This document shows positions 8,750 to 50,074 of a DNA stretch of 64,000 nt, one piece after another (the first letter of the stretch is position 1; every line of letters begins with the position of its first letter). The stretch lies in the IMG/VR virus record IMGVR_UViG_3300045973_000169, positions 62,001-126,000 of that record. One strand, 5' to 3'. A program made the position numbers and the translations under genes. Below the pieces are notes generated by a model, which worked only from the letters and a program-made list of their open reading frames with translations, ran no database searches and was not told where the DNA came from.

Positions 8750-9139
8750 ATGGAAATTACAAAAGTACAAGTATGGAAAAACAAAAGTGAAACATTTGTA
8801 GCAAATTGCAGCGTTGAATTTGATGATGTATTTTTTGTCAAATGTAAAGTAGTTAAGTCAAGCAAAGATGGGTCTTTATTCATTTCTTGGCCTAATACCA
8901 AGGGAAAAGATGCAGATGGAAATGATAAGTATTTCCCAGATGCAGGTTTTGTTTTAGGTGAAGATGAAGAAACGAAATATGACTTTAAGAATGCTATTGA
9001 TGATCAGATTATCAAAGAGTATAATAAAGTTGTAGGGATTGATTCTGGTACGAAGAATGGTAAGAAGGATGAAACTCCTCCTGCTGATCCGACTCCAACT
9101 AAGAAAACCCCTGATATTAAATTTGGGCCTAAGAAATAA
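8750..9139 (+). CDS. SpoVG-like nucleic-acid-binding protein
   Basis: MEITKVQV...VEFDDVFFV..KVV...G.LFISWP pattern of the SpoVG fold. Confidence 0.7.
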   Translation: MEITKVQVWKNKSETFVANCSVEFDDVFFVKCKVVKSSKDGSLFISWPNTKGKDADGNDKYFPDAGFVLGEDEETKYDFKNAIDDQIIKEYNKVVGIDSGTKNGKKDETPPADPTPTKKTPDIKFGPKK

Positions 9140-9156
9140 AAAGAAAAGGAAACATA

Positions 9157-9657
9157 ATGCTTAAATTTAAAGTATCTAAATTAAAATCTACAATGGAAAT
9201 GTCTGTTTGGGAAAAGAAAGTTACTGGAGATACAGTTGAAATTGTAAACAAAGCTATATTAGAGATTGCTCCTGCTCTTGTTGATGCCCCAAAGGGTCAG
9301 CCTAAAGCTGGAGAAAAACGTTATGATTATGCTAAGAAAGTTAAGATTTCTTTTAATCCTACTGATATGCTAAAAGTAGCCTATAATCTTATTATGATGT
9401 CTTATGGGAATGAGATTGAATATAAGAAAATGGGTGATGCATCTAGAGCCAATGCTAATAGTTCAGGTATTAAATCTCTATCTATTAAGTTGAATGATAA
9501 AGGTTCAATTGCTATTAGTTTAAATGAAGATAAAGATGGCGCTAAATCTAGTGTATTTATTTATCTTGAAAAAGACGAAGCTTATGCTTTGGCTAAATGG
9601 TTTGAAGTAACTTATACTAAACTTTATAATAATCCTGATGCAAGTGAGGATGAATAA
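9157..9657 (+). CDS. hypothetical protein (possible ssDNA-binding, Whirly/PC4-like)
   Basis: RYDY.KK.K.SF pattern, acidic tail; weak resemblance only. Confidence 0.4.
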   Translation: MLKFKVSKLKSTMEMSVWEKKVTGDTVEIVNKAILEIAPALVDAPKGQPKAGEKRYDYAKKVKISFNPTDMLKVAYNLIMMSYGNEIEYKKMGDASRANANSSGIKSLSIKLNDKGSIAISLNEDKDGAKSSVFIYLEKDEAYALAKWFEVTYTKLYNNPDASEDE

Positions 9658-10499: not shown

Positions 10500-11147
10500 A
10501 TGGCGACTGAATGTAATAATAAAAATAAAGAACTTGTATCAAGGCCAGAACTTGCTAGGATAATTAACTATGAGTTTAGCAATAAAGCTATCTCTATGCT
10601 TGAACTATTAGGTGATGGAACTGGGTTAGACTATTATATTGATAAATGTAATATAAAAACAATGTATGCTATTGAACGTCATAAAGATAATTTTAATAAG
10701 TTTTGTTATAGGATGAAAGATTTTTGGTTATATCCTCCATTAGTTCTTCATAAATCAAATGCTGAAATAGTACCTTTGCGAATTCAGTTGAATAAATTTT
10801 TTAATAATTTTACATATATATCTTTTGATGTTGTAAATCTAGATTTTTGTTCTTATCTATATGATAATGGGACTGAGAAATCTACTGGTTTTGTTATACG
10901 CAATATGTTTAAAAATAAAGCTGTTAAAGATAATGGTTTAGTGTTATTTACTTTTATGGTGAAAGGGATGGGTATTAACTTTAGTAAAGTGAATCCTATA
11001 ACTGAAGATGAAGATATAATTGATACTATTACATCTATAGGGCTAGAGAATGGATATATAGTCCATGATGCTTATCCTTCATTACATTATAAATCAAGTA
11101 AAAGTACAGAGATGGCTAATTATATAGTTAGAGTTAATAAAATATAG
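10500..11147 (+). CDS. putative SAM-dependent methyltransferase-fold protein
   Basis: MLELLGDG.G, AIE, FDVVNLDFC motifs. Confidence 0.5.
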   Translation: MATECNNKNKELVSRPELARIINYEFSNKAISMLELLGDGTGLDYYIDKCNIKTMYAIERHKDNFNKFCYRMKDFWLYPPLVLHKSNAEIVPLRIQLNKFFNNFTYISFDVVNLDFCSYLYDNGTEKSTGFVIRNMFKNKAVKDNGLVLFTFMVKGMGINFSKVNPITEDEDIIDTITSIGLENGYIVHDAYPSLHYKSSKSTEMANYIVRVNKI

Positions 11148-11420
11148 GAGTTACAAATGGAATATTATGTATTAGAAAAAGGCGTAGACACAAAAAGATA
11201 TTTAAAAGATTTCTGTGAGTCTATAACTAATGGTAAGTCTGATGAAACATGGACTTTAGATTTGTCTAAAGCTATGCTTTTCAATAAATATAATCCTAGG
11301 AAATCAGAAGTTACTAATGATCAATGGACTGTTTCGTTTGATAAAGAAGAACGTGTACGTTTTGTAACTAAAAAGTGTGAAGTAAAGATAGTCAGATAAA
11401 CCGATAGTACTGGAGCTTCA

Positions 11421-40149: not shown

Positions 40150-40422
40150 ATGATAGGGATTTTAGCAACTATACTAACAATTGGATCTATATTACCCCAA
40201 ATAAAAAAGACATGGGAATCAAAATCAGTTGATGATTTATCTCTATGGCAAATGGTAATCCTTACAATAGGAATATTGTTTTGGTTACTATATGGTATTC
40301 AGATTCATGATACTGTTGTTATAGTTGCTAACTCTATTAGCTTATTGCTTCAGTTATTTATGATTGGAATGAAACAAATATATGGAAGTAAGGAATACAA
40401 ATGTCTAAAACACTTAAGATGA
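40150..40422 (+). CDS. SemiSWEET / PQ-loop small transporter
   Basis: LPQIKK..SKSV.DLS, WLLYG, VIVAN; 3 TM. Confidence 0.85.
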   Translation: MIGILATILTIGSILPQIKKTWESKSVDDLSLWQMVILTIGILFWLLYGIQIHDTVVIVANSISLLLQLFMIGMKQIYGSKEYKCLKHLR

Positions 40423-41932: not shown

Positions 41933-42721
41933 ATGAAAGTTAAGTTAATTCATGCTACTCCATTAGATATCTTAGTTCAGGCTATCCGTAAATGCTATGA
42001 TAGTGGAAGTAAAAGTGATTCTGGATACTTTGAAAAGAATGAACAACTATTAGTTAATGAGAAGTATAAGTATAGATTAGGCGAGAAAGATGAAGCTCTC
42101 ATTAAGAGAGTAATTGAAGCTGGACATACATCTACTCTTGAACATATTAATTTTACATTTGACCTAGGTGGATACAGCAGAGCTTTATTGCAAGAGAAAT
42201 CACGTCATCGTCATGCTGCTGTAAGTGAACGTTCAACTAGATATTGTTTAAAGAAGCTCAAGGATATTAAGTCTTTAGTTACTGTACAAAGATTTCCATC
42301 TGGACAAGAAATCTTTATGTGTAATAAGCAAGAAGCTGCAAAGTATCTTGTTCTTACTGGAGATGAGGATGTAGACAATCTTTCTATTGAGGCTCTTGAT
42401 AGACTAAGACAATTGCTTGTTCGTAAACCTGAGCTTCGTAATGATGTAGCTAAATATCCTATTCCTGATTCATTGAGAACAGAATGTATCTTTACTATTA
42501 ATGCTAGGAGTCTAAGGAATTTATTTAGTCTTAGGATCAGTAAACAGGCTTTATGGGAATTCCAAAAGTTATGTTGCTATATGTATGAATCAATCCCTTT
42601 CCCATATAAATTTCTAGTTGATGATTTAGTTAATAAAGAGATATATGAATTCTGGATGGGTAGTGACAAACCAGCAGATGGTGGTCATGCTAACTTGTTT
42701 GAGAGGTATTATAGAGTATGA
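41933..42721 (+). CDS. thyX: flavin-dependent thymidylate synthase
   Basis: GHTSTLEH, SRALLQE.SRHR...SERSTRY, NARSLRN..SLR....A.WE. Confidence 0.93.
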   Translation: MKVKLIHATPLDILVQAIRKCYDSGSKSDSGYFEKNEQLLVNEKYKYRLGEKDEALIKRVIEAGHTSTLEHINFTFDLGGYSRALLQEKSRHRHAAVSERSTRYCLKKLKDIKSLVTVQRFPSGQEIFMCNKQEAAKYLVLTGDEDVDNLSIEALDRLRQLLVRKPELRNDVAKYPIPDSLRTECIFTINARSLRNLFSLRISKQALWEFQKLCCYMYESIPFPYKFLVDDLVNKEIYEFWMGSDKPADGGHANLFERYYRV

Positions 42722-43890
42722 GTACTTGTGTCCCGCTTCATGTTCATTCTGAAGGTTCAGTAAGAGATAGCATTAATAAAATATCAAATTATGTACAAAA
42801 ATGTGTTGAACTAAAATATACTGCTGCTAGTATTTCAGATCATGGATTCATGGGATATAATTATAAGTTCTATAAAGAATGTAAAAAGTATAATATAAAA
42901 CCTATTCTTGGACAAGAATTCTATTATACCCATGATAGAGCTGATAAGGGGTTAAATTATCATTTAGTCTTATACGCCATGAATGAGAAAGGGTATCAGA
43001 ACCTATGTAAATTAAGTTCTGACGCGTTTATTAATGGATTCTATAGGAAGGCTAGGACAGATAAAACAATCCTTGCAGAGTACTCTGAAGGCTTAATTTG
43101 CACTCCTGCTTGCTGCTTTGGTATGGCACAACAATATATTGTAAATGGTGAGATGGATAATGCAATCCAAGAAGTAAAAGATTTACAATCTATCTTTAAA
43201 GAGAATTTCTATCTTGAGATTCATGATCATGGGATTGAAGATGAAATTAAAATTAAGGATGAGTTTCGTAATATAGGGAATGACTTAAATATTAAAGTAG
43301 TCCCTGGAATTGATGTCCATTATACTAATAAAGAAGATCAGAAGATTCATGGTATCTTTAAGAATATTGCTTATGCTTCTGGAGGAGAAAAGGATAGTTC
43401 CTTTAATGGGACTGATTTCCATGTTCTATCTCCTGAAGAGATGGCAGTTAAATTTACTAAAGAAGAATTAGATAATACTCTTGAAATAGCAGATAAGTGT
43501 AATGTAGATTTTAAATTTACTGGTTACTTCTTACCTACATATGATATTCCTGAAAAAGAGTTTGATACATATGAATATCTTAGAACTATATGCTTCAGAG
43601 AACTTAAAAAGAAAGGTTTAGATTCTAACCCTCTATATGTAGAGAGATTAGAGTTTGAACTTAATATGCTCCATCTGGCTGACTTAGAGAACTATCTTCT
43701 TATAGTGTCTGACTATTGTAATTGGGCTAAGAATAATGATGTCCCTGTTGGACCTGGACGAGGATCTATGGGTGGTTCTATTGTAAGTTGGTTAACCAAT
43801 ATTACAGGAGTTGATCCTTTGAAATATGACTTACTTTTTGCAAGAGCTATCAACCCAGGTAGAAGTTTACAATTTGATTTTGGAGTCTAA
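42718..43890 (+). CDS. dnaE: DNA polymerase III alpha, N-terminal piece (PHP + start of palm)
   Basis: LHVHS..S..D, SDHG, KPILGQE, HL, DVHY, GPGRGS, ITGVDPLKYDLLFARAINPGR, then stop. Confidence 0.9.
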   Translation: MSTCVPLHVHSEGSVRDSINKISNYVQKCVELKYTAASISDHGFMGYNYKFYKECKKYNIKPILGQEFYYTHDRADKGLNYHLVLYAMNEKGYQNLCKLSSDAFINGFYRKARTDKTILAEYSEGLICTPACCFGMAQQYIVNGEMDNAIQEVKDLQSIFKENFYLEIHDHGIEDEIKIKDEFRNIGNDLNIKVVPGIDVHYTNKEDQKIHGIFKNIAYASGGEKDSSFNGTDFHVLSPEEMAVKFTKEELDNTLEIADKCNVDFKFTGYFLPTYDIPEKEFDTYEYLRTICFRELKKKGLDSNPLYVERLEFELNMLHLADLENYLLIVSDYCNWAKNNDVPVGPGRGSMGGSIVSWLTNITGVDPLKYDLLFARAINPGRSLQFDFGV

Positions 43891-44593
43891 TTATGTCTAA
43901 TAATCATAAATATTATGGTTGGTCTGGAAACGTTAGTTATAGAACAAATGTAATTAAAGCAACAAAAGAATGTGTATGTAATATTTGTAATACTACTATA
44001 AGAGAAGATGATCCAATGATTAAGTCTAATTTGTGGGTTAAATTCATGCCAACTTATCAAAAGAGTATTAAATCTTGTATTAAATGTGCTTCTGATCCCG
44101 TGGGCTTTATTTTTACTATAACTACTTTAATGAGAGAATTTATGGAAAAAGATAATATCCCAGATAAAAAACCGAAAAAGGTAAATAAAAATGGTAACAA
44201 TTAAAGATTTTACTAACCAAGAGTTAATTAATGCAATAGCAAAATGGTTAAACGAAGAATCTATATTAGAAGATAATAAATTTATTTCTTTTATATACAA
44301 TGATATTGCAGATAGACTTAAGTCTAATGAATGGTTAGAAAATATAAATGATAAATTAAAAAAGGAAAATAAATAATGGCAAGTCAAAAATATTGTAAGG
44401 TACAAGTAACGCTAGGAATTGGAAATCGTAAATCACAGGTAACTGATCCCATTGAAGTAGATGATGCAGTAAATACATTTGATGGAGAACTTAACACTCT
44501 GTTGCTCAATGTAGAAGATGCAATTAAAGCTCTCCCATGTAGTGATGGTAATTATACAAAAGTAAATATTGTAGATGCATTATGTACACTATA

Positions 44594-45295
44594 TGGTCTA
44601 CAAAGGGTTCCAGCATAATGAAAGATAATTACACTCATATACATTTTGTATTAGACCGTTCTGGTTCTATGGAGTCTGTTTGGAATGATACAATCGGTGG
44701 ATTTAATACATTTCTAAAGACACAAAAAGAAGCTGTTGGAGAAGCTACATTCTCATTAATTCAATTTGACCATGAAGTTATTACTGACTATTCATTTATC
44801 AATATCCAAGAGGTAAAAGAACTTGATAGAGAATCATTTGTTCCTCGTGGAATGACTGCTATGAATGATGCTATTGGGGTTGCTATTAATGATTGTGGTA
44901 AAGCTCTTGCTCTATTAGATGAGAGTGAAAGACCTGATAAAGTTATTTTTGTTATCTTAACTGATGGCGGAGAGAATGCTTCTAAAACATTTAGCCGTAG
45001 TAAAATTAAAGAAATGATTGAACATCAGAATCTTGTTTACAGTTGGGCTTTTATGTTCTTAGGTGCTAATATTGATGCATCTAAAGTTGGAGCTACACTT
45101 GGTGTTGATGCTGATTTTACTTCAGGGTTTGAAGCGAGTACTCGTGGTGTTTCCAATACATTTGGAACATTAGGGAATAAACTAGGAAATATGCGTAGTT
45201 CTGCTGGTCCATTATATTGTATGGGCGTAAAGTCTCCTATTGCTAAAGCTTCTTCTTATACTGTTGCTGAACGTGAAGAGATGAATCAAAAATGA
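44594..45295 (+). CDS. vWA-domain protein
   Basis: VLDRSGSM, G.TA..DA, ILTDG.ENAS MIDAS motifs. Confidence 0.85.
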   Translation, partial: WSTKGSSIMKDNYTHIHFVLDRSGSMESVWNDTIGGFNTFLKTQKEAVGEATFSLIQFDHEVITDYSFINIQEVKELDRESFVPRGMTAMNDAIGVAINDCGKALALLDESERPDKVIFVILTDGGENASKTFSRSKIKEMIEHQNLVYSWAFMFLGANIDASKVGATLGVDADFTSGFEASTRGVSNTFGTLGNKLGNMRSSAGPLYCMGVKSPIAKASSYTVAEREEMNQK

Positions 45296-45538
45296 TTAAA
45301 TGTCTAGACTGTGACTGGATGGAAATTAATTCTGGTTATCATGGATGCTATCATAATTGTACTCATGAATCATGTTTTGAAAATAGAGAATATGAAGGAT
45401 CTTGTTCTGAAAAAGCATTGAGTGGAGTAGACTCATTCTTTAGAGTAGTGCGTATAACTAACTTTGAAGTTAAGAATTGCAATCATGATTGTGTAGATTT
45501 TAAAAAGAAAAGATCAATATTAGATAGGATATTTTTAC

Positions 45539-47893
45539 GTGATTAAATACCATATAGATAGACCTATAGTTGAATATGTACAAGCTAATGAACGTTTTTT
45601 AGAATTAGATGATAATGAACATATTACACTATATAATGAAATTAAAAATGCTGTTCTTCAAGGAATAGACGATAAAATATTAAGTAAAGTATTTGATGAA
45701 GCTCCCTATATGAATGATAGCAGTATTAATTCCTATCTATTATGGGTACTCCATTTGACAAAAGATAAGCCTACTGGATTACAGAAGATTAAATCTCCTG
45801 GATCTTATTGTGATATCGACTTAGACTTCTCTCAAGAGAAGAGAGAAAAAGTATTTGATTATCTTGCTGAGAAATATGGCTCTACTAGAGTAAGTCATAT
45901 TGCTACATTTGGAACTATGGGAGCCAAGGCTGCTATCAGAAACTCTGCTAGGGCCTTGAGCTACCCAACTGAACTCCAGAATAAAGTAGCTAAATTTATA
46001 TCAGATGAACCTAAAGCAACTATTCAAGGGAGTATTGATGCTTCTAAAGAATTCCAAGATATGATTAAGAAATCTGAACAAGTTCAACATATTATATCTG
46101 TTGCAAAGAAGCTGGAAGGATTACCTAATTCACTTAGTGTCCATGCTTCTGCTGGTATTATATCTGATGTTGCAACTACTGATAGAGTTCCGATGATGGT
46201 ATCTGCTAAGAAGAATGATCCTATCACTGGGATTAGTGGATCTAAAGTTGTTTCTCAATTTGATATGAAAGATGTTGAAAATGCTGGTTTATTAAAATAT
46301 GATATTCTTGGTCTTAAGACTCTTGATATTATAAATGAAACAGTTAAGATAATTAAAAGGAATAAGGATATAGATATCGATATTGAATCGATTGATATGA
46401 ATGATCCTGGAATCTATAAACTTCTTAATGCTGGACATGTAACTATAGTATTCCAATTTGATGGAACTGCTGCTGCATATCTACCTAAGATTAAACCTCA
46501 AAATATAGATGAAATATCAGACTTAACTTCAATACTCCGTCCCGGACCGATGAGCATGGGAATGGTTGAGAGGTATGCTGAAGCTAAATTTGAGAATAAG
46601 AAATATGAATATGAATTGAAAGATCAAGCTCTTATTGCTAAAGTTTGGGAAATATGTTATCGTTCATATGGATTAATGATATACCAAGAACAAACAATTA
46701 AATGTTTTGTTGAGATAGCAGGATTCAATGAAATCGCTGCTGATAATGCTAGAAGAGCTATGGGTAAAAAGTTACCTGAAGAGATGGCTAAATTAGAAGG
46801 AGCGTTTGTTGAAGGTGGAATTAAAAAAGGCTATAACGAGAATGACCTTAAGACTTTATTTAAAGGGATCGCTGGATTTGCAGAATATGGGTTTAATGCA
46901 TCGCATGCAGTATGTTATTCTTTTATTACTTGTCAAACTGCTTGGTTATCCCATTATTATCCGTTAGAGTTCTTTACTGCTGCTATGACTATTGATGCAG
47001 GGAATACTGATGATATTAGACGTTATATCAAATCAGCTAAAGAAAGAAATATAATTCTTTCACCTCCTGATATTAATAAATCTGATAGTATGTTTACTAT
47101 TAAAGACGAATCTATTGTTTTTGGACTTAATGCTATTAAAGGTGTTGGTCCATCTACATCGAAAAAGATTATGGCTCGTAGACCTAAAAAAGGATATACT
47201 TCTCTTGGTCATTTTATTAGGCGTAATCTCGATTTGATTAATTCAAAGATACTTGAATCATATACGAAAGCTGGATGTTTTAAATCATTTGGTTATAATA
47301 AGCAATCTGTTTTAAATAGTATCCAGAATATATTGGATTTTATTAGTGTCTTGAAAGAGTATGATAAGTACAATACTTTCTTTGATCTTTGTAACATCTC
47401 ACTTGACAATTTTATAGATTCATGTATAATGAAAGATTCCCAAAAAGAAGACACATTATCTTATGAGATTGATTCTTTAGGTCTTTATATTAGTAAACAT
47501 CCTATGGATGTATATGATCTTAAAGGAATGAATGATCCTTCTTTTGTAGAATATTATGAGAATGAAGATGAATTTATCACTATAGGGTGTCTATCTGGAA
47601 TAGAAGTTAGAAAGACTAAAGCCAAACTAAATATGTGTAAGTTTAATATTGCATCTAGCATGTATAATCTTCCATGTATTATATTTCCTAAAGCATATTC
47701 TAAATATGTTAATGACCCTACTATCGCTGAAGGTAGAATGGTATGTGTCCAAGGAAGAATAAAAATTTCTGATACTGGTAGAGAATTAATTGTGAATGAT
47801 ATTCATGATAATATCGATAGGTATCTTGTTAGAAAAGTAATTAATAAAAATGAGTTTCCAATAAACTCCAAATTAACATTTATATTAGGATAA
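45539..47893 (+). CDS. dnaE: DNA polymerase III alpha, C-terminal piece (palm/fingers/HhH/OB)
   Basis: CDIDLDF, HAS.G, KYDILGL.TL, RPGP, IYQEQ, RRAMGKK, YGFNASHA, PDIN.S, GL..IKGVG, OB fold. Confidence 0.92.
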   Translation: MIKYHIDRPIVEYVQANERFLELDDNEHITLYNEIKNAVLQGIDDKILSKVFDEAPYMNDSSINSYLLWVLHLTKDKPTGLQKIKSPGSYCDIDLDFSQEKREKVFDYLAEKYGSTRVSHIATFGTMGAKAAIRNSARALSYPTELQNKVAKFISDEPKATIQGSIDASKEFQDMIKKSEQVQHIISVAKKLEGLPNSLSVHASAGIISDVATTDRVPMMVSAKKNDPITGISGSKVVSQFDMKDVENAGLLKYDILGLKTLDIINETVKIIKRNKDIDIDIESIDMNDPGIYKLLNAGHVTIVFQFDGTAAAYLPKIKPQNIDEISDLTSILRPGPMSMGMVERYAEAKFENKKYEYELKDQALIAKVWEICYRSYGLMIYQEQTIKCFVEIAGFNEIAADNARRAMGKKLPEEMAKLEGAFVEGGIKKGYNENDLKTLFKGIAGFAEYGFNASHAVCYSFITCQTAWLSHYYPLEFFTAAMTIDAGNTDDIRRYIKSAKERNIILSPPDINKSDSMFTIKDESIVFGLNAIKGVGPSTSKKIMARRPKKGYTSLGHFIRRNLDLINSKILESYTKAGCFKSFGYNKQSVLNSIQNILDFISVLKEYDKYNTFFDLCNISLDNFIDSCIMKDSQKEDTLSYEIDSLGLYISKHPMDVYDLKGMNDPSFVEYYENEDEFITIGCLSGIEVRKTKAKLNMCKFNIASSMYNLPCIIFPKAYSKYVNDPTIAEGRMVCVQGRIKISDTGRELIVNDIHDNIDRYLVRKVINKNEFPINSKLTFILG

Positions 47894-48123
47894 ACAATGT
47901 CATATAATCTTGCACGTAGAGTATTAAGAGCAGAAAAGAAAGAATTTGTAACATCTTGGAAAAAGAAAAATAAAGTTAGTGATCAAAGCATAGCTAAATA
48001 TATCTCGAATAAAAATAAGAAAATGAGTCTTGAAAATCAATATGAAGCGATTCTTGAGATTACATTTAATGCCTTGCAGAAGCAGGCAGAAGCAGCTAAA
48101 ACTCCTAGTGAAGAGGTAATTTA

Positions 48124-49242
48124 ATGGCTCCAAAAAAAGAGAAAGCAACTGTAAAAACATCTGGATTAACTTACGAAGAAGCAGTCAAGGTTGTTAAAGC
48201 AGCAAAAGGGTCACAAAGTATTATTGGATCTGAAATCCCTGAGTATTGTTCTGTTAGGAAAATTAGGACTGGTATCCCAACCCTAGATTATGAATTAGGT
48301 GGTGGTATCAGTGAAGGTCGTATTACTATTATGGGTGGTAAACCTAGTTCTGCTAAGACTACCACTACCCTACAAGGTCCGGTTTCAGCTCTTATTAATG
48401 AGATCAAAGCTAGTGGCGAAACAAAATTTGGACTTATTGTAGATTCAGAAGGCGGATATGATTCTCCTTATGCTAGAGCATTAGGTGTAGATGAAAAGTA
48501 TCTTATTATTAAACGTAAGAAAGTTATTGAAGATGCATTCCAAGAGATAGATGATCTGATTTCTATGGGACTTATTAAGTTTCTTGTTATAGATTCATTG
48601 GATACAATGGTTTCGAAGAAAGGTGATGATAATAAGTATGCTGCTACAATGGGTGGTACTGCTGGAGCTTTGGCTCAACATCTCCCTGTTTTATATGAAA
48701 AGATTATGGAATGGAATGTTACAACAATTATTATTAAACAAGCTCGTGTTAAGATTGGTGGTTTTAATCCAACTGGGAATGAGATAATTCAACTATCTGG
48801 TGGTTATGCACTAAAGCATCTAGCTGATAGTATTTTCATTGTAAACAGATTATCTAACAAGAATCTATCTTATACTCCTATCCAATTAAAAGCAGTTAAG
48901 ACTAGAAGCTCTAGACTTGGACTTATTATGGATATGCCTTTAGGCTCATGTGGGATTGATGTTGTTCATGATGCTATTGCTCTTGCTATTGGACATGGAT
49001 TGATTACTACGGGTGGCGGTGGTTGGACTCAGTTAGATGATGACCAAGGAAAGATCCTAGTCAGAGAACAAGGACTTGATAAATTTGTTGCTAAGATTAA
49101 AGATAGTGCTACATTAACCCAATCACTTATAGATAGTGTTTATCTTAATATTATTGATACTGCACTTGTTGGTAGGAATACTACTGAAGGTGGAGATCTT
49201 ATTTCCGATATTGAAAATGAGAAAGAAAAAGTAGAAGAATAA
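48124..49242 (+). CDS. recA: RecA/UvsX-like recombinase
   Basis: TG...LD..LGGG...GR, Walker A GKPSSAKTT, DSE, VIDS, Q.R..IG, SGG.AL.H. Confidence 0.85.
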   Translation: MAPKKEKATVKTSGLTYEEAVKVVKAAKGSQSIIGSEIPEYCSVRKIRTGIPTLDYELGGGISEGRITIMGGKPSSAKTTTTLQGPVSALINEIKASGETKFGLIVDSEGGYDSPYARALGVDEKYLIIKRKKVIEDAFQEIDDLISMGLIKFLVIDSLDTMVSKKGDDNKYAATMGGTAGALAQHLPVLYEKIMEWNVTTIIIKQARVKIGGFNPTGNEIIQLSGGYALKHLADSIFIVNRLSNKNLSYTPIQLKAVKTRSSRLGLIMDMPLGSCGIDVVHDAIALAIGHGLITTGGGGWTQLDDDQGKILVREQGLDKFVAKIKDSATLTQSLIDSVYLNIIDTALVGRNTTEGGDLISDIENEKEKVEE

Positions 49243-49321
49243 TGGCTATCGCAAAGCAATATGCAACACGTAATAAAAATTAGTTATTAACATATGTAAT
49301 TAACTATTTATGGAGTTACAT

Positions 49322-50074
49322 ATGAAACAAAAAATTAATTTATTAAATATAAGATTTGGCAGACTCCTGGTAATACAGGAGTCTGAAAAAACATCTTATA
49401 ATAGAACACAATGGCTTTGTAAGTGTGATTGTGGGAATGAAGTTAAAGTTGCTACAACAAGCTTACAATCGGGAGCTACTGTATCATGTGGTTGCTTTAG
49501 GATAGAGCAATGCAGTAAAAAACTTTCATTAGATTTAATTGGTAAAAAATTTGGGAAATTACTTGTTTTGGAAAGAAAAGGATCTCAAAAACTTAATGGA
49601 GAAAATTATAAATATGCAAGGTCAGTATGGCTTTGTTTGTGTGATTGTGGGAAAACTTATGAAGTTACAGGGCAATTACTTATATTAAATAAAGTTTGTT
49701 CATGTGGCTGTGCTTCAGTTATAAGTGGCGAAAAACATCATAATTGGAATCCAAATAAAACGGATGAAGAAAGGTTACAACATCGAGATACCAAAGAGTA
49801 TTTTAAATGGCGTAAATCTATATTCAATAAATTTAATTGGACATGCCAATGTTGTAAAGTTAAGAGACATTTAGGACTAAATGCACATCATATCCAAAAT
49901 TACTCAAATCATAAAGAATTAAGATTTAATATTGATAATGGTTTACTATTATGTAGATATTGTCATAGAAAATTTCATAAAGAATATGGTAGAAAAAATA
50001 ATAATATTTCTCAATTAAAGGAATTTTTACAAAATAATGAAAAAGAAACAGTACTGCACAAGGATGCTTCTTAA
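49322..50074 (+). CDS. HNH homing endonuclease
   Basis: FG.L.V...W.C.CDCG repeats, HHNW, AHHI...NG..LC..CH..FH. Confidence 0.9.
   Translation: MKQKINLLNIRFGRLLVIQESEKTSYNRTQWLCKCDCGNEVKVATTSLQSGATVSCGCFRIEQCSKKLSLDLIGKKFGKLLVLERKGSQKLNGENYKYARSVWLCLCDCGKTYEVTGQLLILNKVCSCGCASVISGEKHHNWNPNKTDEERLQHRDTKEYFKWRKSIFNKFNWTCQCCKVKRHLGLNAHHIQNYSNHKELRFNIDNGLLLCRYCHRKFHKEYGRKNNNISQLKEFLQNNEKETVLHKDAS

What the first reader, a model, noticed from the sequence alone, without database searches (positions are those of the whole stretch)
42718..47893. DnaE split into two ORFs without inteins, with a degenerate duplicated junction
Seen: piece 1 ends ..GRGSMGGSIVSWLTNITGVDP..ARAINPGR-SLQFDFGV*, just before the catalytic DxD. 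Piece 2 begins 1.65 kb and five genes later with ~85 aa that echo the same segment (LYNEIKNAVLQG..NDSSINSYLLWVLHLTKDKP vs RLEFELNMLHLAD..GRGSMGGSIVSWLTNITGVDP) but lack GRGS, followed by CDIDLDF. No intein N-terminal Cys block or HN terminus is visible. Inference: partial duplication and subfunctionalisation gave a two-subunit polymerase in which GRGS and the catalytic aspartates come from different chains.
Basis: partly seen in the sequence, partly recalled or inferred. Interest (0 to 1): 0.65.

Follow-up and report, generated by a model that had tools for sequence, protein, structure and literature searches.

The report
Two-gene DnaE polymerase in jumbo phages
This jumbo phage, like at least 40 related uncultured phages, encodes its only recognisable DNA polymerase as two separate proteins cut through the catalytic core, and each protein keeps a decayed copy of the part the other supplies, which points to an internal duplication followed by splitting.

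Summary
Piece 1 (42718-43890, 390 aa) holds the PHP domain and the N-terminal palm subdomain with an invariant GPGRGS. Piece 2 (45539-47893, 784 aa) holds the catalytic DxD, a third Asp, fingers, HhH and a weak OB match. Five ORFs lie between them. No intron, intein or homing-endonuclease signal is found in the window.

The split is not an artefact. About 46 protein clusters of piece 1 and about 28 of piece 2 (44-66% identity) come from independent metagenomes, on contigs up to 401 kb. All break at the same residue, with 0 to 6 genes in the gap. The 24 piece-2 sequences tested group together (SH-aLRT 100).

Piece 2's 88-aa N-extension is as conserved as the catalytic core. Its fold model matches only C-family polymerases (top 7 of 48,161 PDB chains), from the start of the palm. 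A distant relative bridges it to the canonical palm segment, with GRGS exactly deleted (hhalign probability 81%). Piece 1 in turn ends in a decayed copy of the DxD strand.

Best reading: tandem duplication of about 118 aa, complementary decay, then fission into an obligate heterodimer with a composite active site. A complex model supports binding (0.85 against 0.01 for controls). I rate it a new variant of a known kind. Biochemistry is untested.

The parts
42718..43890 (+). DnaE piece 1 (390 aa): PHP domain plus the N-terminal palm subdomain
   Evidence: Pfam PHP E 2e-43 and DNA_pol3_alpha positions 1-101. Aligns to E. coli alpha 7-403. About 46 homologous clusters of 378-403 aa. PHP ligand positions H8, H10, D17, H42, E67, H82, C132, D199 and H201 are invariant in 20 family members.
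43750..43767 (+). GPGRGS loop (aa 345-350), the G-S nucleotide-binding motif of the Pol-beta-like palm
   Evidence: G345, G347, R348, G349 and S350 are invariant and P346 nearly so in the family. In the complex model residues 347-351 touch piece 2.
43864..43890 (+). Conserved C-terminal tail SLQFDFGV plus TAA: a decayed copy of the DxD strand
   Evidence: Aligns to E. coli 397-403. The family consensus is SLQYDFGV or LLQYKFFED. The majority-residue fraction is 0.68. All of residues 375-390 lie in the predicted interface.
43893..44204 (+). Gap ORF 1 (103 aa, Cys-rich), function unknown
   Evidence: No Pfam or PHROG hit. No homologue in the gaps of L005, L006 or L087.
44191..44376 (+). Gap ORF 2 (61 aa), function unknown
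   Evidence: No hits.
44376..44618 (+). Gap ORF 3 (80 aa), conserved small protein
   Evidence: 58% identical to the 78-aa ORF that lies directly before piece 2 in L006.
44582..45295 (+). Gap ORF 4 (237 aa), VWA-domain protein
   Evidence: Pfam VWA at E 7e-5, just under the cut-off, and phrog_7371 at E 3e-56. Its homologues in L005 and L087 lie downstream of piece 2, so the gene has moved relative to the polymerase pieces.
45292..45546 (+). Gap ORF 5 (84 aa, Cys/His-rich); its stop overlaps the GTG start of piece 2 by 8 nt
   Evidence: No family hit.
45539..47893 (+). DnaE piece 2 (784 aa): N-extension, catalytic palm strand, thumb, fingers, HhH and a weak OB match
   Evidence: Pfam DNA_pol3_alpha positions 100-260, finger and HHH_6; OB at E 0.009, below the cut-off. 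Aligns to Taq 460-1088. About 28 family clusters at 45-66% identity.
45539..45802 (+). N-extension (aa 1-88): degenerate duplicate of the palm N-subdomain without GRGS; predicted docking module
   Evidence: Residues 2-6, 33-50 and 58-68 touch piece 1 in the complex model. In 1.84 billion representatives it occurs only at the N-terminus of piece-2-like proteins.
45812..45826 (+). DIDLD (D92, D94, D96): catalytic DxD strand
   Evidence: Invariant in 27 family members. D92 and D94 align with E. coli D401/D403 and Taq D463/D465.
46301..46303 (+). D255, the third catalytic Asp, in LLKYDILGL
   Evidence: Invariant in the family. Aligns with Taq LLKMDFLGL.

Best explanation
The phage's replicative C-family polymerase (DnaE, Pol III alpha) is an obligate heterodimer encoded by two genes. 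Piece 1 supplies the PHP domain, which is a likely 3'-5' proofreader because all nine metal-ligand positions are kept. It also supplies the N-terminal palm subdomain with the GPGRGS triphosphate-binding loop. Piece 2 supplies the strand with the catalytic DxD, the third Asp, and the thumb, fingers, HhH and OB parts. The active site is therefore assembled from two chains.

An ancestral DnaE most likely underwent an internal tandem duplication of about 118 aa, covering the palm N-subdomain plus the DxD strand (E. coli roughly 287-404). The first copy kept GRGS and lost DxD; its remnant is the tail SLQYDFGV. The second copy lost GRGS and kept DxD; its remnant is the 88-aa N-extension. A stop and a start codon arose at the copy boundary. 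This adjacent state is still seen in a relative (L087), where TAA is followed directly by ATG.

The decayed second copy is retained as a helical module that packs against piece 1 and probably holds the two chains together. The inter-piece boundary later became a landing site for small genes, five of them in this window.

Shown here: the anatomy, the conservation, the homology of the extension, and the predicted binding. Inferred: the order of events, the docking role, the activity, and PHP proofreading.
For: Same break point in about 46 piece-1 clusters and about 28 piece-2 clusters from JGI, ENA, Logan and NCBI assemblies, on contigs up to 401 kb.

Synteny is ThyX, piece 1, 0-6 variable genes, piece 2, RecA, 5'-3' exonuclease, primase-helicase.

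The 24 piece-2 sequences form one group with SH-aLRT 100 and a stem of 1.25.

GRGS is invariant only in piece 1, and D92, D94 and D255 only in piece 2.

The N-extension is as conserved as the palm (0.62 against 0.62) and the tail scores 0.68.

hhalign hits fall only on the GRGS-helix segment. The bridging sequence P0250 gives 81% probability.

The N-extension model (pLDDT 83) has C-family polymerases as its top 7 of 48,161 chains, Z 7.4-4.4, with the next unrelated chain at Z 3.1; it aligns to Mtb DnaE1 316-416.

Complex model: ipSAE 0.85 in each of 3 runs, best control 0.01. That mark was reached by 58 of 80 solved complexes and 2 of 110 mismatched pairs. The runs agree in at least 90% of contacts and partner pLDDT is at least 80. 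My own alignments were used, so these counts are rough.

Piece 2 folded alone has pLDDT below 50 at residues 84-95, which include the DxD strand.

No PolA, PolB or DnaQ-type exonuclease was found in the 206.6-kb genome.

Stop codons differ among relatives (TAA, TAG) and further in-frame stops follow them.
Against: No experiment supports any of this.

The complex score may simply reflect the model's memory of intact DnaE structures.

The family-level profile hits are weak (probability 5-16%). Z scores of 4-7 would be unremarkable for a small helical model if the hits were not all one family at the expected segment.

AlphaFold may have been steered to a DnaE-like fold by faint sequence similarity, which would still imply homology.

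The polarity of adjacent versus gapped arrangements is not resolved.

P0250 sits on a long, unplaced branch, so one or two origins cannot be told apart.
Confidence: 0.75

Rival explanations
1. The split arose by insertion of a mobile gene or cassette (free-standing homing endonuclease, intron or moron) into an intact dnaE, without any duplication. On this view the N-extension is a newly acquired or de novo docking domain that only resembles the palm subdomain by convergence.
For: The DxD site is a hot spot for mobile elements. There is a probable LAGLIDADG intron at ...GSYPD|IDSD in L087, and group I introns sit at ...PDVDTD| in Bacillus phage WH1. Gap content is highly variable. BLASTP, Pfam and a PDB sequence-profile search see no similarity for the extension.
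Against: The structural hits are exclusively C-family polymerases, at the exact segment and in the right order before DxD. P0250 bridges to the canonical sequence with GRGS precisely deleted. Invariant E34 and S65 align with invariant E and S of intact DnaE. Piece 1 also carries a decayed DxD strand, which simple insertion does not predict. No endonuclease lies in the window's gap.
Confidence: 0.12
2. Piece 2 is a self-sufficient polymerase in which the N-extension occupies the canonical palm-N position. Piece 1 acts only as a separate PHP proofreading subunit, playing the role of epsilon.
For: The N-extension has the palm-N fold and is covalently joined to the DxD strand. PHP ligand positions are conserved in piece 1. 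No DnaQ is encoded in the genome.
Against: GPGRGS is invariant in piece 1 and absent from the extension. The complex model puts piece 1 residues 342-351 against piece 2 residues 97-105, next to the DxD strand. Piece 2 alone folds with low confidence around DxD, with pTM 0.41.
Confidence: 0.08
3. The two ORFs are joined into one chain after transcription or translation, by cis- or trans-splicing intron, split intein, ribosomal bypass or stop read-through.
For: Relatives do carry introns and an intein-like insert elsewhere in piece 2. In L087 the ATG of piece 2 follows the TAA of piece 1 in frame.
Against: No Rfam hit at E <= 1 across 42000-48500. No Hint or intein domain. The gap holds 0-6 unrelated protein genes in different relatives. 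The conserved Met-[IV]-K-[YW]-H start and the conserved tail argue for separate proteins. Further in-frame stops follow piece 1's stop in the window, L005 and L006.
Confidence: 0.03
4. Assembly artefact or a decaying pseudogene.
For: Only one sequencing run, probably the source sample, holds this exact DNA.
Against: A Logan contig of 41.7 kb covers the whole stretch with 0 differences. The split recurs in dozens of independent assemblies with strong purifying conservation of both pieces. No other DNA polymerase was found in a genome that CheckV rates 100% complete.
Confidence: 0.01

Closest known systems
Minimal split Pol III alpha of group 2.2 (T4-like) jumbo phages (Iyer et al. 2021, Viruses 13:63, PMC7824862)
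   Same: A C-family catalytic module is split into separate proteins between the N-terminal NTP-binding (G-S) subdomain and the Mg-binding (DxD) subdomain, in jumbo phages. It is presumed to be reconstituted as a complex.
   Different: That version is a minimal core without PHP or the other DnaE domains. It is encoded by distantly located genes and accompanies a family B polymerase. Here the enzyme is a full-size DnaE (PHP to OB) and the only polymerase found. The pieces lie 0-3 kb apart, and each carries a decayed duplicate of the other's half. I did not compare the sequences directly because no accession was to hand.
Cyanobacterial split DnaE joined by a naturally split intein (Ssp/Npu DnaE; from my own knowledge)
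   Same: dnaE is encoded as two genes.
   Different: There the halves are ligated by protein trans-splicing, at a different site (after about residue 774). Here there are no intein blocks and the break is inside the palm at about residue 390.
Group I intron-interrupted DnaE of Bacillus jumbo phages such as vB_BceM_WH1
   Same: The dnaE reading frame is broken at the DxD motif (...PDVDTD|) and annotated as several 'DNA polymerase III alpha' CDS.
   Different: There RF00028 group I intron signals fill the ORF-free gaps (E 9e-5 and 8e-6), so the mRNA is presumably spliced into one ORF. The window has protein genes in the gap, no intron signal, and extra conserved protein sequence on both sides of the break.
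Genes in pieces in T4-like phages: Aeh1 nrdA split by mobE, and gene 43 split into 43A/43B (Friedrich 2007 and Petrov 2006; from my own knowledge)
   Same: An essential phage replication or nucleotide-metabolism enzyme is encoded as two polypeptides that reassemble without splicing.
   Different: Those are a different enzyme family (RNR, family B polymerase). The nrdA split is caused by a homing-endonuclease gene that is still present. No duplicated, complementary-decayed junction has been described for them.
Rossellomorea phage phiT1 DnaE (PV767480)
   Same: A phage DnaE annotated as two CDS with a small ORF between them.
   Different: The break is at about residue 573, with a 49-aa ORF between the parts. 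I did not analyse it further, and it is unrelated to the clade described here (about 32-36% identity).

Membership tests
C-family replicative polymerase DnaE (Pol III alpha) | N-terminal PHP domain | tested here: met
   PF02811 at E 2e-43 in piece 1. Nine metal-ligand positions are invariant in the family; their assignment to ligands rests on the alignment to Taq and on my own knowledge.
C-family replicative polymerase DnaE (Pol III alpha) | Pol-beta-like palm with the G-S loop, DxD and a third Asp | tested here: met
   GPGRGS is in piece 1, and D92, D94 and D255 are in piece 2, all invariant, with alignments to E. coli and Taq. The motifs are present but distributed over two chains.
C-family replicative polymerase DnaE (Pol III alpha) | Fingers, HhH and OB domains | tested here: met
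   PF17657 at E 2e-40 and PF14579 at E 3e-20. The OB match (PF01336) is only E 0.009, below the cut-off, so OB is inconclusive.
C-family replicative polymerase DnaE (Pol III alpha) | Single polypeptide | tested here: not met
   There are two ORFs 1648 nt apart. The split is conserved across the clade.
Intein-split DnaE | Hint/intein splicing blocks flanking the break | tested here: not met
   No intein or Hint Pfam hit in either piece or in the gap ORFs. Piece 1 ends ...DFGV, with no intein N-block. Piece 2 starts MIKYHI and its extension has the palm-N fold, not a Hint fold.
Group I intron-interrupted gene | Group I ribozyme between the exons | tested here: not met
   No Rfam match at E <= 1 in 42000-48500. 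As a positive comparison, RF00028 is found in Bacillus phage WH1 dnaE. Rfam can miss divergent introns: L087's probable intron gave no hit at the gathering threshold.
Homing-endonuclease 'genes in pieces' (mobE type) | Free-standing endonuclease gene between the two halves | tested here: not met
   The five gap ORFs have no HNH, GIY-YIG, LAGLIDADG or PD-(D/E)xK hit in Pfam or PHROGs. One relative has no gap at all.
Minimal split Pol III alpha of group 2.2 jumbo phages | Break between the NTP-binding and Mg-binding palm subdomains | tested here: met
   The break falls between GRGS (aa 347-350 of piece 1) and DxD (aa 92-94 of piece 2). The family is described in PMC7824862.
Minimal split Pol III alpha of group 2.2 jumbo phages | Minimal core only, co-occurring with a family B polymerase | tested here: not met
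   PHP, fingers and HhH are all present. No PF00136 hit in the genome.

The most novel reading that the evidence does not exclude
A natural replicative polymerase has its catalytic centre built from two polypeptides, with the G-S loop on one chain and the DxD strand on the other. It arose by duplication of a sub-domain followed by complementary decay. The dead copy was re-used as the glue between the subunits. The arrangement has been stably inherited across a deep, habitat-spanning clade of jumbo phages, in which the inter-subunit boundary became a gene-insertion hot spot.
Probability: 0.6. Interest if true: 0.7.

Novelty: new variant of a known kind. Interest (0 to 1): 0.62.

Why it matters
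Split polymerases are known, but they are usually explained by inteins, introns or endonuclease insertion.

This case preserves the molecular fossil of another route: a sub-domain duplication, complementary degeneration of the two copies, and then fission. It cuts between the two halves of the nucleotidyl-transferase active site of a replicative enzyme.

It offers three things. It is a natural test bed for how a Pol-beta-like palm can be assembled in trans. It is a ready-made split point, with a natural docking module, for engineering split C-family polymerases. It is also a synapomorphy that marks an uncultured clade of jumbo phages.

There is an annotation consequence too. Piece 1 is currently labelled only 'PHP domain-containing protein' in at least one public record.

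Tried and rejected
BLASTP of the N-extension against the C-terminal 140 aa of piece 1 gave no alignment.

Pfam scans of 27 N-extensions gave only scattered chance hits. A PDB sequence-profile search gave nothing meaningful.

Megablast of the locus against 50,697 phage records found no match.

The search for related loci in IMG/VR found no relative with the single protein. With the family alignment it found only relatives at 38% identity or less, presumably intact DnaE; I did not inspect them. All clade members therefore came from the protein collection and its contigs.

Rfam gave nothing in the window, or at gathering threshold in L003, L005 or L087.

The promoter and terminator scan was at chance level, with no + strand terminator between thyX and recA.

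The sequencing-run search found one DNA run, probably the source pond metagenome, and no RNA run. Laying it showed only that an independent contig agrees.

Piece 2 folded alone gave pTM 0.41, so I did not use it to place the extension.

The supplement of the Jug-phage paper, which reports DNA polymerase genes split by endonucleases, is not held. Whether Jug phages belong to this clade is untested.

The careful tree search did not finish, so the quick IQ-TREE result is reported.

Full report
CONTEXT. The window is bases 62001-126000 of a 206,638-bp IMG/VR virus record that CheckV rates 100% complete. GC content is about 31%, and the genes in and around the region lie on the + strand. The only sequencing run holding this exact DNA is a pond metagenome, probably the source sample. 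A Logan contig of 41.7 kb from that run covers 42718-47893 with no difference.

OBSERVATION.

Piece 1 (42718-43890, 390 aa) has a PHP domain and the first 101 positions of Pfam DNA_pol3_alpha. It aligns with E. coli alpha 7-403 and Taq 9-460.

Piece 2 (45539-47893, 784 aa, GTG start overlapping the previous stop by 8 nt) matches DNA_pol3_alpha positions 100-260 from residue 89. It also has the finger and HhH domains and a sub-threshold OB match. It aligns with Taq 460-1088. D92 and D94 therefore correspond to Taq D463/D465 and E. coli D401/D403, and D255 lies in the LLKxDxLGL strand that carries the third catalytic Asp.

Five ORFs of 103, 61, 80, 237 and 84 aa fill the 1648-nt gap. Only the 237-aa one has a family, VWA and phrog_7371.

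No intein, Hint or homing-endonuclease domain was found. No Rfam family matches 42000-48500 at E <= 1.

THE SPLIT IS CONSERVED. A word-index search with piece 1 returned about 46 clusters of 378-403 aa (a few shorter fragments among them) at 44-64% identity. They come from JGI, ENA, Logan and NCBI assemblies, on contigs up to 401 kb.
- Their C-termini are conserved...NPGRSLQYDFGV or ...GRLLQYKFFED.
- A search with piece 2 returned about 28 clusters, mostly 776-809 aa, at 45-66% identity. There is then a sharp drop to intact DnaE of about 1150 aa at 37% identity or less.
- In a quick IQ-TREE of the shared region, the 24 family members form one group with SH-aLRT 100 and a stem of 1.25 changes per site.

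Contexts are syntenic: ThyX, piece 1, variable genes, piece 2, a small ORF, RecA, 5'-3' exonuclease, primase-helicase. The gap content differs in each contig examined:

| Contig | Genes between the pieces |
|---|---|
| L087 | none (TAA directly followed by ATG) |
| P0045 contig | one 58-aa gene |
| L005 | two |
| P0020 contig | two |
| L006 | three |
| This window | five |
| P0014 contig | six |
| P0024 contig | six, including ClpP and ThyX |

The window's VWA gene has homologues downstream of piece 2 in L005 and L087, and gap ORF 3 matches the ORF before piece 2 in L006. Stop codons differ among relatives (TAA, TAG), and further in-frame stops follow them. The closest deposited phage sequences (gut 'Bacteriophage sp.' contigs, 36-40% identity) include at least one with an intact 1153-aa DnaE, L001. 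The split is therefore a derived, inherited and selected state. It is neither an artefact nor a pseudogene.

IT IS THE ONLY POLYMERASE FOUND. The genome has no Pfam match to family A or family B polymerases, to DnaQ-type exonucleases, or to the beta clamp. The nine PHP metal-ligand positions (H8, H10, D17, H42, E67, H82, C132, D199, H201) are invariant in 20 family members. From what is known of PHP proofreading in Taq and M. tuberculosis DnaE1, piece 1 probably carries the proofreading exonuclease. This is an inference.

THE 'ECHO' IS REAL. All family members of piece 2 begin with a conserved extension of about 85 aa: MIKYHI.N.LT...RF..LT.EEH.RLY.EIKNATLQGI..KL...N.VNSLLLWVL.ITD.KPTG.QKIKS.GSY, followed by DIDxDF. 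Its column conservation (0.62) equals that of the palm and thumb (0.62), and piece 1's tail scores 0.68. BLASTP, Pfam and PDB sequence-profile searches see nothing in it. Four other tests converge.

(a) hhalign of the extension profile gives a single hit on RGSxxGSLVSYLTGITxVDP, with E 0.0016 against the piece-1 C-terminal profile. Against a 1173-column profile of 25 intact DnaEs the single hit is again GRGSgAGSLVaYxLxITDiDP, with E 0.008.

(b) An exhaustive HMMER search of 1.84 billion representatives found the extension only at the N-terminus of piece-2-like proteins or their intron-cut first exons, 12 hits in all. One hit is a distant 855-aa protein, P0250, from a soil contig.

(c) P0250's extension aligns to intact-DnaE columns 326-393 at 81% probability, E 1.3e-5. 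It has two deletions, and one of them removes exactly GRGS. Adding P0250 to the family profile lengthens the family hit to 56 columns (residues 24-81 against columns 326-392, E 0.0022). That places invariant E34 and S65 on invariant E and S of intact DnaE.

(d) AlphaFold folds the extension alone with pLDDT 83 and pTM 0.75 as a small helical module. In an exhaustive structural comparison with 48,161 PDB representatives, the top seven chains are all C-family polymerases: Mtb DnaE1, two PolC, E. coli alpha twice, and Taq. Their Z scores are 7.4-4.4, rmsd 2.8-3.4 A, over 78-82 of 86 residues. The next unrelated chain has Z 3.1. The aligned range in Mtb DnaE1 is 316-416, which runs from the start of the palm to the DxD strand.

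Taken one at a time these scores are modest. What carries the argument is that every method points to the same family, the same segment and the same order.

Piece 1 mirrors this. Its last eight residues align with E. coli 397-403, the DxD strand, but the Asp residues are not kept. The two genes therefore overlap by one duplicated unit, equivalent to about E. coli 287-404. Copy 1 has GRGS intact and DxD decayed. Copy 2 has GRGS lost and DxD intact.

PREDICTED ASSEMBLY. I folded piece 1 with piece 2 residues 1-440, each with its family alignment.
- The score (ipSAE) was 0.85 in each of three runs, and the best of three controls scored 0.01.
- That mark was reached by 58 of 80 solved complexes and 2 of 110 mismatched pairs.
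- The runs agree in at least 90% of contacts, and partner pLDDT is at least 80.
- My own alignments were used, so the calibration counts hold only roughly. The pass may reflect the model's memory of intact DnaE structures.

The interface includes piece 1 residues 342-351 (around GRGS) against piece 2 residues 97-105, next to DxD. It also includes PHP against palm and thumb, as in intact enzymes; all of tail residues 375-390; and extension residues 2-6, 33-50 and 58-68 against the piece 1 helix at 316-337. One such contact is 1:320 with 2:36, which by the hhalign mapping is a contact between homologous helices.

Piece 2 folded alone has pLDDT below 50 at residues 84-95, around DxD, and pTM 0.41.

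MECHANISM (inferred). The enzyme is an obligate heterodimer with a composite active site. The decayed palm-N copy acts as a docking module. Proofreading is done by PHP. The clamp is probably the host's, because the place of the internal clamp motif GQxSLF reads NTFFDL and no dnaN is encoded. With no + strand terminator between thyX and recA, the module is probably co-transcribed.

ORIGIN (inferred). The steps were tandem duplication, complementary degeneration, and then stop and start codons at the copy boundary. The adjacent state survives in L087. The boundary later accreted genes.

WHAT IT IS NOT. It is not the cyanobacterial intein-split DnaE, which has a different site and intein blocks that are absent here.

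It is not an intron-broken gene like the dnaE of Bacillus phage WH1. There, group I intron signals fill ORF-free gaps right after ...PDVDTD.

It is not a mobE-type endonuclease insertion.

The nearest published parallel is the 'minimal' Pol III alpha of group 2.2 jumbo phages. That enzyme is split between the NTP-binding and Mg-binding subdomains (PMC7824862). However, it is a bare core, its pieces are encoded at distant loci, and it sits beside a family B polymerase.

Three literature searches found no description of a full-length, intein-free DnaE split with a duplicated junction. A 2026 paper on 360-402-kb gut 'Jug' phages notes DNA polymerase genes split by endonuclease genes (PMC12880540). 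Whether those phages belong to this clade could not be checked.

VERDICT. This is a new variant of a known kind, namely split polymerases. Its interest lies in the preserved evidence for the duplication-decay-fission route and in a trans-assembled catalytic centre. Biochemistry has not been done.

Noticed in passing
L087:8177-9660: In this relative, piece 2 is cut after ...KSEGSYPD by a 273-aa LAGLIDADG ORF plus roughly 300 nt, and resumes at IDSDYSKLQREKV. This is probably a group I intron inside the DxD codons. A second LAGLIDADG ORF (10671-11330) cuts the fingers. Rfam gave no hit at the gathering threshold.
   Followed up: partly
L005:11632-16231 (401.7-kb contig) and the P0024 contig: Piece 2 is further broken into 2-4 ORFs by LAGLIDADG ORFs. 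The clade seems prone to invasion by mobile elements in piece 2, separately from the conserved break between piece 1 and piece 2.
   Followed up: no
P0247 (555 aa, fragment of a family piece 2): It carries an intein-like insert, ...GVHA|CSAGEGNLL ... GILVHN|CAFVISD, in the conserved HA..ISD motif of the palm.
   Followed up: no
L088:7193-7806 and 8891-9215 (Bacillus phage vB_BceM_WH1): The dnaE of this phage is annotated as three CDS, and the two ORF-free gaps match Rfam group I intron RF00028 below the gathering score (E 9e-5 and 8e-6). The first intron sits right after ...NPERNAMPDVDTD, the same catalytic hot spot.
   Followed up: partly
L089:2575-5142 (P0250, soil metagenome contig): This is a distant piece-2-like DnaE with a less decayed N-extension. 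It has no piece 1 next to it; its neighbours are a baseplate-J-like gene and an NT5C gene. It could be a second lineage with the pieces far apart, or an independent fission. Its branch in the tree is long and unplaced.
   Followed up: partly
window 44582-45295: The VWA-domain gene (phrog_7371) lies between the polymerase pieces here but downstream of piece 2 in L005 and L087, so there has been a local gene rearrangement within the replication module.
   Followed up: partly
window 40150-40422: A 90-aa PQ-loop/MtN3 (SWEET-like half-transporter) membrane protein is encoded in the phage replication module. The P0014 contig carries the same family of gene in its replication module.
   Followed up: no
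window 49310-50074: A 254-aa Cys-rich ORF with a C-terminal HNH endonuclease domain lies directly after recA. It may be a free-standing homing endonuclease. Relatives carry DUF723 or HNH ORFs at varying places in the module.
   Followed up: no
L002:1921-5203 (Rossellomorea phage phiT1): This DnaE is annotated as 573 aa plus 469 aa, with a 49-aa ORF between them. The break is at a different site, and its cause was not examined.
   Followed up: no
window 47330-47350 (about aa 598-604 of piece 2): The position of the internal beta-clamp-binding motif, GQxSLF in intact DnaE, reads NTFFDL here. The genome has no dnaN match, which suggests the phage uses the host clamp or a different processivity factor.
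   Followed up: partly
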